Assembly: GCF_032062105.1 (NCBI RefSeq)
Contig: NW_026927936.1
Coordinates: 62,001-126,000 of the forward strand
Direction: 5' to 3'
Origin: Saccostrea cucullata
Lineage: Eukaryota
DNA length: 64,000 nt
Numbering within the stretch: position 1 is the first letter of the stretch; every line of letters begins with the position of its first letter. This document shows, in pieces, positions 54,001-57,000 of this stretch. Below the pieces are notes generated by a model. The model saw only the letters and a list, made by a program, of their open reading frames with translations. It was not told the origin of the DNA and did no database searches. A program made the translations under genes and the position numbers.

Positions 54001-57000
54001 AAATACTTTTCAACTTGCAATGAAACGATTCGGAAATCAGTGAAACGATCACAAAGACCATGTTTTTATTCTCTAGCGGGTTGTGGGGAGAATCCGCGGG
54101 TGTGTTTGATTTGTTAAGGGTTTTAAAACGCATCCCGCAGCTTACCTAAATAGATGTCTGTTCGCAAACATTTGTTTTCTAAAGCCCATCTGGTTGCTTT
54201 CGATGTTTTCTAAATATCAAAGAGACGAACCTGATCGCTGGCTTTTCCTCCCGAAGAGGGGAGGATTAATGGATATTGTATCCAAAGGAAATTATCCTAT
54301 TTTAAAATCAATTTATCAAGCGATACCATATTTTAAAAGTTTTAAAAATGCTAAGGAAAAAAATCCGCAACGTTAATAACTTTAACAATAGAGACGTTAA
54401 ATATGCATCATTTTATTCATTTGAGTAAGTAAATTCAAGAATTATAAGATGAGATAAAAATACATAGGTTTTGTCCTAAATGGGATAAAAACAGGGTGTT
54501 GAACTTTGCAGTTGGTATTGGACTATGCTTTGAGGACTTAGCTTTAAGTGCTAATGTTCTTGAATGAAAACAGAGATTTTATTTTATAACAAAAGTTGTT
54601 GAATTTTTTAACCAAAATTAATCAAACTGAATTGTTAATTAAGCAGGCGAAAGACGGGATATTGAAAAAAAAGACGCTTGATTAATTTGAGCCATCATTT
54701 TCTTTTCTGTGCCAGCAAAATCCTCTATTTTTGGGCACCTTAATGTAAAGATTGAAGTACCAAACCAAATCGAGCGTTAGGTCCGAATAATGTTAATCTT
54801 TTTCCTACAAAATTGACATTTTCATATATTTCCAATATTCTATTCATTTAGTTGTTAATATTCAGTAGAAAACTTTAATTTCTAAAGAAATCTCGTATAG
54901 AAGCTTCTGATAATTCGTCTCCGCCAATCACCGCCCGCCTTCTTTTAAGTCTCGCGAGACATCGAGCACTTGAGCGAGCTTGGGAACGTCTCTCGGTCTT
55001 TGAGCATCAGACAATACCTTGTTGAAAGTGCTTTAGGTCGAGTATCCACCCTTATTCCCGGTAATGACCATATGCCTTCATCATTTGCACCCCCCGGGTA
55101 ATAGTGGGTTTTTACAAGAGCTGCATTGAATCTCGTTCCCCCTTCTGCGTCGGTCGGGATGAGGTCTCAACGTCTTGTTTAATGACACTGTAAATATTTT
55201 GAGTAAACACTGAGACATTCCCCTAACAATTGCTTAGTTTGCCTACTCTTGGAATTATGATGTCCAGTAAAAGGAGAAATTGACTACTTCATACATCGAT
55301 ATTTTTCCCTTTTATTGAGTTCAACAGCTTGAGTAAACAGTTTATTGAGTTACATTTAGCAATGTATAGTGTTACTTTTTTTAATTTTGATACATTGAGA
55401 TTTAATACCCCTAACCACAAAGCCAAATAACAAATCACATAAGACCGTTTCTTTAACGACATAAAGCAAGTCTTAAAGTCCGTGTCATTTTTTTGAAAAT
55501 TCATGTAGAATTACTATAGTAATTTTTCAAAAAAAAAAAAAAAGATCCAATTTGAAAATTGATTTCTTGTATATAATAAACATATATTTAAGTGGGTCCC
55601 CAAATTTTATCGATAATTAATTTTATCACATCTGTCTTGATTTTAGGCCCCCAAATCCAATCACGTCTGCATGGTTGCACAAACCGTACCAGTAATCGCG
55701 CGAGTCATCTGATTTGCATTTTGATTTTGTGTTTCCGTCCTAAGTTCTCTAAAAATCGGTCGTGAACCGTCGGAAAACACGAGTTCTGTTATGATCTCAT
55801 AAGATTTCATAGAGTGCCCCTGCCGGGATAATGATTAATTACAGAACAATAATAGGGCGCATGTGCAACCCATTCCCATGGAAACTGGACTTGTGTCCTT
55901 TTTTCCTGAAGTTTGTGGTTTTGAATTTCAACAAAAATTTGAACAAACAGGACAAGCAAAATCAGCGCAAACAAATATAGATACATTCTCTGCAATATGA
56001 TCTCCAAAATTATATGAAAAGTTTGGCTGAATATGATAACACTAAAAATCTATGATTACAAAAGTTTGAAATGATAACTTATAAAATACTAAGTAAAATG
56101 CAAGATCCTAATCATTTGATATTCATTGGTATTGTCTATCAGAAAGACAGTATCTTTTGATTTAAAACGATCTTAAATTCTGTAATTATTTACACGATAC
56201 ACTTTTCAAGTACACAAAGTATTGAATTTTAAAGAATTCAAATTGGACATCAATTCGTACAGAACAATAATTTTTCTTTCCAGGTATTTTAAGTCCTTTG
56301 AATTTTAATTCCAGTTTTATGTTTATCTCTGAAATATCTCTACTTTTTTCCTCCTACTGAAATACTGGAACACATTGTCTTGCTCTGCACCGAGTAATCT
56401 GAATTTATTTTTGGTTTTGATTAATTTTCACCTCTTTGAAATAATAGCACATATAATTAAATGTATTGGCTGGAATTCAAAAAGTTATAATTCTAAAAGA
56501 TTCTGTAATTTTAAATTCTTGATTTATTTAATAAATTTGATTTTAAATTGAGGGTTAGTGGTTAAGGTGAACCGTGTCTGAAAATGTTGTTCCTGTATTT
56601 CAGATTTCCTCCGTCAACCTGGTGCTTCGAAATCTTGCAAAAGAAGACCAGGTGATTTTACTATTTATTTAGCTACCAAACAAATGGTAAAAAAAAAAAA
56701 TATAAAATAAAAATGGAATACATATATTAATTGAATTTTTTAATATTCAAAGTCCTATAATTGTAGACTAAAAATATATACTTTAGGACTTGCATAGCAC
56801 CAATACAATACTTCATTTATCATGTGTGGCAGACATTTTCAAAATCTGCTGAATAGATATACGATCATTTTTTGGTAACTTTTAATTCACAGTTTATTGC
56901 AAATCTATAGTTATTTTTAAAGTTTGTGATTAATATTTTGCAGGTTTCTTCCATTAACCGTGTGCTACGAAATCTTGCCAGCGAGAATCAGAAAGTCATG

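What the first reader, a model, noticed from the sequence alone, without database searches (positions are those of the whole stretch)
56604..56651. Hidden duplicated paired-domain recognition-helix exon: a candidate new Pax6 DNA-binding splice switch
Seen: 340 bp upstream of the exon starting [16 protein letters not shown] is a 48-nt copy reading [16 protein letters not shown], with its own polypyrimidine/CAG acceptor and CAG|GT donor in phase 0-0. It differs at 13/48 nt, 8 of them at third codon positions, with no indels or stops and mostly conservative swaps (V/I, I/V, N/D). This suggests an old duplicate under purifying selection rather than debris. Known: this segment is helix 6, the recognition helix of the C-terminal (RED) subdomain. 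The one radical change (R->L, equivalent to human PAX6 R125) hits an arginine that contacts DNA in the Pax6 paired-domain structure. Vertebrate Pax6(5a) retunes binding by a 14-aa insertion in the N-terminal (PAI) subdomain. Inference: inclusion gives ...[30 protein letters not shown]..., placing the variant helix in the RED fold and displacing the canonical one, a mirror-image analogue of 5a that arose by exon duplication. It cannot be mutually exclusive with exon 4, because the following exon is phase 1.
Basis: partly seen in the sequence, partly recalled or inferred. Interest (0 to 1): 0.9.

Follow-up and report, generated by a model that had tools for sequence, protein, structure and literature searches.

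The report
Oyster Pax6 duplicated-helix cassette exon
Oysters and pearl oysters have kept, for roughly 250-350 million years, an optional 48-base exon in the eye and brain regulator Pax6 that inserts a slightly altered spare copy of one of its DNA-reading helices, probably giving a second form of the protein that binds DNA differently.

Summary
The gene is Pax6 of a Saccostrea oyster: all 11 exons match RefSeq S. cucullata X1. The 48-nt copy of helix 6 is an in-frame cassette exon. It is in RefSeq/UniProt isoforms of five oyster species (16/16 aa), and both junctions are intact in nine spliced RNA contigs; skipping forms are far commoner. It is also present, unannotated, in Pinctada, and absent from the orthologous intron of scallop, mussels, ark shell and Solemya. 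Its synonymous sites are more conserved than those of the constitutive exons. AlphaFold2 puts the copy in the helix-6 slot, which replaces the near-invariant Arg122 with Leu. New here: a predicted 13-bp hairpin, kept in all four lineages, covers the exon's own splice donor, and the Leu codon lies in its stem, so R122L may be partly RNA-driven. The insert is not unseen: Navet et al. 2017 noted it in C. gigas in one sentence, without calling it a duplicated or alternative exon. No earlier scan finding describes it.

The parts
56604..56651 (+). 48-nt cassette exon, phase 0-0; partial tandem duplicate of the first 16 codons of the next exon (paired-domain residues 117-132, helix 6) with V117I, I120V, R122L, S129K, N131D
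   Evidence: in RefSeq isoforms; both junctions 40/40 in nine RNA contigs
56582..56603 (+). conserved 3' splice-site flank of the cassette: 22 nt identical in C. gigas, while the canonical acceptor flank is not conserved; may form a short hairpin with 56576-56583 (weak support)
56614..56655 (+). predicted 13-bp RNA hairpin: 56614-56628 pairs with 56643-56655 and covers the cassette's 5' splice site (last 9 exon nt and intron +1 to +4)
   Evidence: predicted, no compensatory change seen
53413..53759 (+). paired-box exon (paired-domain residues 1-116, ends at NIPS, phase 0); upstream splice partner
56944..57157 (+). canonical exon with helix 6 and the MYDKL linker (214 nt, phase 0 to 1); source of the duplication and downstream partner
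45019..63897 (+). whole Pax6 coding region, 11 exons: 45019-45058, 46799-46873, 53413-53759, 56604-56651, 56944-57157, 62227-62370, 62484-62566, 62706-62872, 63129-63235, 63438-63560, 63782-63897
   Evidence: exon-by-exon translation identical to XP_062614184.1 (P0228)

Best explanation
An old partial tandem duplication of the helix-6 exon became a cassette exon in the ancestor of oysters and pearl oysters. Skipping, the common outcome, gives ordinary Pax6. Inclusion puts the copy directly after the NIPS loop, so it packs as helix 6 of the RED subdomain. It keeps the core residues and S118, S119, N121 and R125 but loses Arg122, while the original helix is pushed outward as a helical extension. 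The product is a full-length Pax6 with weakened or retuned RED-DNA contacts, reading sites mainly through PAI, linker and homeodomain: the opposite shift to vertebrate Pax6(5a). Inclusion is held down, and probably tuned, by a weak donor (GTGA) folded into a 13-bp hairpin. Shown: exon, splicing, both isoforms, distribution, constraint. Predicted: helix placement and hairpin. Inferred: altered DNA binding and regulated inclusion.
For: Isoform pairs that differ only by this exon are annotated in C./M. gigas, C. angulata and S. cucullata; inclusion and skip isoforms also exist in S. echinata, and inclusion isoforms in C. virginica. Nine spliced RNA contigs carry both junctions; skip contigs stand in 109 blocks. 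The copy is present in Pinctada and a fourth oyster lineage and absent in Pecten, four Mytilus genomes, Tegillarca and Solemya, all gap-free introns with best peptide score <=28 against 66-74. The Ostreida/Pterioida split is dated 294 (241-348) Mya (PMC10543319) and 316 Mya (PMC5597905). In the copy pN < pS (C. gigas vs Pinctada 2/35 vs 5/13, p=0.011; window vs Pinctada p=0.04), and pS is far below that of the constitutive exons (0.16 vs 0.60-0.68, p=0.003). Position 122 is Arg in 206 of 216 proteins and Leu only in the ten oyster inclusion isoforms; it is Arg in Pax5, Pax8 and Paired as well. AlphaFold2 with an alignment cut at NIPS (pLDDT 75) runs one helix from the copy into the original and aligns colinearly with 6PAX 12-133; the single-sequence model agrees. 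The RED mutant R128C shifts site preference rather than abolishing activity (PMC3945805). Hairpin: z -2.4 to -3.6, donor pairing 0.91-0.99 against 0.05-0.70 at the other donors of the gene.
Against: There are no binding data. AlphaFold2 may simply favour the nearest helix, and the rmsd of 18.5 A reflects PAI/RED orientation, so only the register is informative. The leucine codon is also the best codon for the hairpin, so its conservation need not reflect protein function. The hairpin has no compensatory change and rests on four sequences. The DNA contact of Arg122 is recalled, not checked.
Confidence: 0.6

Rival explanations
1. RNA-first: selection acts mainly on the pre-mRNA hairpin and splice signals. 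The exon's job is to divert a tunable share of transcripts into a less active or less stable Pax6 (dosage control), and R122L and N131D are by-products of building the stem rather than a designed new specificity.
For: Both non-synonymous changes inside the stem create pairs. CTG gives -16.8 kcal/mol, the best Arg codon -12.1 and most other Leu codons -7.5 to -10.2. Third positions vary at 0/7 stem sites and 6/9 others (p=0.011; 0.028 without the splice G). The one stem substitution (Pinctada) turns U-A into U-G, and a bulged base varies. Only 2-7% of synonymous recodings fold as well.
Against: Residues outside the stem (S118, S119, N126, L127, A128, K129) are unchanged in all four lineages, mostly despite synonymous changes, so the peptide is selected too. 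The exon keeps the frame and a full-length product. There is no compensatory pair, and the stem was found after the fact. This rival and the best explanation are not exclusive.
Confidence: 0.2
2. Two-state (alternate-frame) domain: both helices compete for the helix-6 slot, and DNA with a good RED site pulls the original Arg122 helix back in. The inclusion form is then a conditional or slower binder, or one with a new protein-contact surface, rather than RED-weak.
For: Both segments keep the same hydrophobic face. The original segment is intact in the inclusion form, and I120V in oysters would weaken packing of the copy slightly (inference).
Against: Both models put the copy in the slot. Using the original would need a 16-residue amphipathic segment to loop out of a short connector. 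The Pinctada copy keeps I120.
Confidence: 0.1
3. Replacement splicing: the copy is joined to an internal acceptor at the CAG ending codon 16 of the canonical exon (56989-56991), swapping helix 6 cleanly like a mutually exclusive exon.
For: The copy ends exactly at the equivalent CAG, and that CAG is present in all bivalves examined.
Against: There is no pyrimidine tract before it. The CAG is equally conserved in species without the copy. None of the 15 listed cluster members or nine contigs shows this join, though only 15 of 73 members could be seen.
Confidence: 0.04
4. Leaky, non-functional exon kept only because it overlaps a DNA regulatory element.
For: The intron holds long conserved non-coding blocks (54595-55295, 55611-55898), and low pS can also mark an enhancer.
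Against: Conservation is confined to the exon and its splice flanks (56578-56670 against Pinctada). Changes are biased to synonymous sites, frame and both splice sites are kept for over 240 My, and inclusion was the assembled path in nine runs.
Confidence: 0.06

Closest known systems
C. gigas Pax6 RED-domain insertion (UniProt K1QCD5; Navet et al. 2017, PMC5333810) and RefSeq oyster Pax6 X1/X3 isoforms
   Same: The same 16 residues at the same place: K1QCD5 (P0235) is the sequence that paper used.
   Different: The paper gives one sentence. It does not call it an alternative exon or a helix-6 duplicate, and gives no distribution, selection or structure analysis. The Pinctada copy is not in its gene model.
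Vertebrate Pax6(5a)
   Same: In-frame cassette exon inside the Pax6 paired domain; two isoforms from one gene.
   Different: 5a is a 14-aa unrelated insert in PAI that leaves RED-led binding and arose in gnathostomes (PMC4488758). This exon is at another intron, in RED, is a duplicate that rebuilds the helix instead of breaking it, and is limited to oysters and pearl oysters. It is not homologous.
Pax7 GL+/GL- and Pax3/Pax7 Q+/Q- splice variants
   Same: Splice changes in or next to RED. GL is inserted at the beginning of helix 6, and GL+ loses pioneer activity at many sites (PMC10415112); Pax3 Q- binds PAI+RED sites better (PMC5852603).
   Different: Those come from alternative splice sites adding 1-2 residues. 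This is a separate exon that supplies a whole substitute helix.
Squid Pax6 variants (Yoshida et al. 2014, PMC3942700)
   Same: Molluscan Pax6 diversified by splicing.
   Different: The squid extra exon 3 lies in the linker after the canonical exon and is unrelated. That paper concluded such variation was unique to coleoids; this bivalve exon contradicts the general claim.
Duplicated-exon switches of DNA-binding domains (TCF3 E12/E47, listed in PMC5852603; FOXP1 exon 18b, from memory)
   Same: A tandem duplicate of DNA-binding-domain coding sequence is used in alternative splicing.
   Different: Those are whole, mutually exclusive exons. Here the duplicate is partial and additive, so the swap would happen in folding, not in splicing.
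Hairpins over 5' splice sites (MAPT exon 10, SMN2 exon 7; from memory)
   Same: A predicted stem covers the donor of a cassette exon.
   Different: Here the stem lies mostly within coding sequence and includes the codon of the key substitution; it is predicted only. No Rfam match.

Membership tests
Pax6 (Pax4/6 class) gene | full paired domain close to PAX6 | tested here: met
   6PAX best hit, E 8.6e-71
Pax6 (Pax4/6 class) gene | homeodomain and MDKL-type linker motif | tested here: met
   MYDKL in 56944-57157; homeodomain exons 62227-62872 identical to P0228; PF00292 + PF00046 on the C. gigas orthologue
Alternatively spliced cassette exon | inclusion and skipping transcripts both exist | tested here: met
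   C. gigas-type RNA contigs with both junctions and skip contigs; RefSeq X1/X2 for the matching species.
Alternatively spliced cassette exon | frame-preserving, canonical AG/GT sites conserved across species | tested here: met
Alternatively spliced cassette exon | inclusion regulated by tissue or stage | not testable with these tools
Exon born by tandem duplication | homology to a neighbouring exon in the same orientation, beyond chance, absent in outgroups | tested here: met
Mutually exclusive duplicated exons | same phases and interchangeable; never spliced together | tested here: not met
   48 nt 0-0 vs 214 nt 0-1; substitution frameshifts; the two are spliced together
Pax6(5a) exon | insertion in PAI at the vertebrate exon 5/6 junction | tested here: not met
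   no intron there in this gene (53413-53759 is one exon); the insert is in RED
Paired-domain splice switch (works like 5a or Pax7 GL+) | isoforms differ in DNA binding or target genes | not testable with these tools
   only models and conservation of Arg122
Donor-sequestering RNA hairpin | stable stem over the 5' splice site, conserved, with covariation | tested here: inconclusive
   stable and 100% paired in four lineages, one U-A to U-G change, no two-sided change

The most novel reading that the evidence does not exclude
A helix-swap switch over 240 My old: a partial exon duplicate supplies a substitute recognition helix that displaces the original during folding and shifts Pax6 away from RED-dependent sites in particular oyster tissues or stages. 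The same bases that encode the R122L change form the hairpin that gates the exon's own inclusion, so RNA structure and protein specificity are written in one codon.
Probability: 0.35. Interest if true: 0.78.

Novelty: new variant of a known kind. Interest (0 to 1): 0.58.

Why it matters
Pax6 isoform switches are a textbook route to new regulatory outputs, but the studied ones act on PAI (5a) or add one or two residues. This would be a natural Pax6 form with a substitute RED recognition helix, in a group where splice diversification of Pax6 had been described as a cephalopod trait. It gives a ready test of what RED contributes to Pax6 targets. It is also practical: RefSeq and UniProt often present the inclusion form as the main oyster Pax6 (X1, K1QCD5), although the skip form is far commoner among RNA assemblies.

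Tried and rejected
I did not resend or trim it, so read laying was not used and there are no junction counts for this genome. One in-script join served only to read the frame. No human contig was fetched; vertebrate proteins appeared in hit lists and one or more of their paired-domain segments were rows of alignment A1. Xu et al. 1999 is not held. Run accessions are not in any held paper. Searches aimed at the insert found no other cluster representative with a second helix 6; these see only representatives of 0.55-1.75 times the query length. L040, an unidentified bivalve, has no copy in the 490 bp available, which is inconclusive. No Pinnidae, Gryphaeidae or named Ostrea locus was reachable. 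No Rbfox motif or telling YCAY cluster lies near the exon. The acceptor hairpin is not distinctive, since a constitutive acceptor pairs as strongly. An 8-nt match upstream of the copy that looked like a third relic is not conserved in other species and was rejected. Homology to squid exon 3 was rejected.

Full report
Observation. Window 56604-56651 is a 48-nt segment between a CAG acceptor and a GTGA donor, 340 bp upstream of the exon at 56944. It matches that exon's first 48 nt at 35 positions, without indels or stops; 8 of the 13 differences are at third codon positions. Shuffled introns never exceed 30/48 in 2000 trials, and the segment is single-copy in the genome. In paired-domain numbering the changes are V117I, I120V, R122L (human R125), S129K and N131D. 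Only the acceptor's last ~10 nt are similar outside the 48 nt, so the duplication was partial or its flanks have decayed, and the donor is new, since the source exon continues in frame at that point.

The gene. The upstream exon is a Pax6 paired box (6PAX, E 8.6e-71). Eleven exons from 45019 to 63897 translate, exon by exon, identically to RefSeq XP_062614184.1, Pax-6-like isoform X1 of Saccostrea cucullata. I therefore take the window for that species or a very near one. Isoform X2 differs from X1 only by lacking these 16 residues.

It is spliced. The same 16 residues stand between NIPS and the canonical helix in annotated isoforms of C./M. gigas, C. angulata, C. virginica, S. echinata and S. 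cucullata; skip isoforms are listed for all but C. virginica. Nine intronless contigs from separate public runs encode the C. gigas inclusion protein, and both junctions match the genomic model 40/40. One skip protein alone is indexed in 109 blocks of contigs. Skipping is thus the usual assembled path and inclusion wins in a minority of samples. This hints at regulation but is not a measurement, and the samples' tissues could not be found.

Age and constraint. The copy lies 233-340 bp upstream of the canonical exon in the window, C. gigas, C. angulata, a further oyster from a metagenome and Pinctada imbricata, where the gene model omits it (14/16 aa). It is absent from the complete, gap-free orthologous intron of Pecten, four Mytilus genomes, Tegillarca and Solemya, and from all other molluscan and annelid isoforms seen. 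The simplest reading is one origin before the oyster/pearl-oyster split, dated 294 (241-348) Mya in PMC10543319 and 316 Mya in PMC5597905. Between window and C. gigas the copy is 46/48 identical, against 40/48 for its source; against Pinctada 42/48 and 37/48. Synonymous divergence is 0.16 in the copy and 0.60-0.68 in constitutive exons (p=0.003), non-synonymous changes are rarer still (p=0.01-0.06), and 22 nt of the acceptor flank are identical between Saccostrea and C. gigas, unlike the canonical acceptor. This is the usual signature of a conserved alternative exon (established knowledge).

Protein consequence. Substituting the copy for the whole next exon shifts the frame, so the product is additive. 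A single-sequence AlphaFold2 model (pLDDT 52) aligned 6PAX 71-133 without gaps to the segment ending in the copy. A second model used an alignment cut at NIPS, so that neither helix had alignment support (pLDDT 75). It ran one helix from the copy into the original and aligned colinearly to 6PAX 12-133. Both put the copy in the helix-6 slot; nearest-neighbour bias is possible. The copy keeps the hydrophobic face and S118, S119, N121 and R125, and replaces R122. That position is Arg in 206 of 216 proteins examined and Leu only in the oyster inclusion forms; it is Arg in Pax5, Pax8 and Paired too. From memory, Xu et al. 1999 list R122 and R125 as RED's major-groove contacts; the paper was not readable. 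The neighbouring RED mutant R128C raises activation from P6CON about 2.5-fold and lowers it on a linker/RED-type motif (PMC3945805), so a RED-weakened Pax6 would be retargeted, not dead. That is the inferred function.

Consensus folding of four lineages gives a 13-bp stem pairing 56614-56628 with 56643-56655, which covers the donor. Each sequence folds this way by itself (z -2.4 to -3.6). The donor is paired with probability 0.91-0.99, against 0.05-0.70 for the gene's other donors, and 2-7% of synonymous recodings fold as well. Third positions never vary in the stem (0/7) and mostly vary outside it (6/9; p=0.011, or 0.028 without the splice G). The only stem change is U-A to U-G, and a bulged base varies. 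There is no two-sided change, the sample is small and the stem was found after the fact, so I put it at about 65%. The leucine codon CTG is the best codon for this stem (-16.8 kcal/mol; best Arg codon -12.1). R122L may therefore have been fixed for RNA reasons, protein reasons or both; residues outside the stem are also conserved, so the peptide is not a mere passenger.

What is known. Navet et al. 2017 wrote that C. gigas Pax6 shows an insertion in RED reminiscent of Pax6-5a, and their sequence K1QCD5 carries exactly this insert. In the library searched I found nothing more on it; that library lacks most subscription journals. It is not 5a: different intron, subdomain and origin. It is not squid exon 3, nor a mutually exclusive pair. 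It works most like Pax7 GL+, an insertion at the start of helix 6 with functional effects, but by a different device, a whole spare helix.

Verdict. A real, old, constrained cassette exon, already in annotations and once mentioned in print, whose duplicate origin, range, helix swap and donor hairpin seem undescribed. The binding change remains untested. New variant of a known kind; interest 0.58.

Noticed in passing
window 53988-54348, 54595-55295, 55611-55898: Long conserved non-coding blocks in the same intron (83%, 87% and 89% identical to C. gigas), with short matches in Pinctada (54604-54645, 55061-55089) and Tegillarca (55178-55209, 55614-55722).
   Followed up: partly
window 63561-63589: RefSeq X3 forms of S. 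echinata and C. virginica (458 aa) match through the donor at 63560 into the intron and end there, giving a short alternative C-terminus; this reading frame is open in the window.
   Followed up: no
window 46799-46873: This 75-nt exon is skipped in M. gigas isoform X3 (P0233), a second cassette upstream of the paired box.
   Followed up: no
L013:18144-18191: The Pinctada imbricata copy of the exon is missing from that genome's Pax6 model (KAK3102662.1).
   Followed up: yes
G000:C8552:209596-209943 (L003) and G000:C13287:59868-60215 (L004): Divergent paired boxes (57% and 53% identity to the Pax6 exon) in long open frames of 597 and 451 codons in this genome; not classified.
   Followed up: no
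proteins P0170 and P0319: Two database proteins (a spider Pax and an unnamed contig ORF) show tandem repeats of the helix 4-5/loop part of RED; these may be other partial duplications or model errors.
   Followed up: no
L040:491-706: Pax6 linker exon of an unidentified bivalve from a metagenome, intermediate between oyster and scallop; no copy in the 490 bp upstream that the contig holds.
   Followed up: partly
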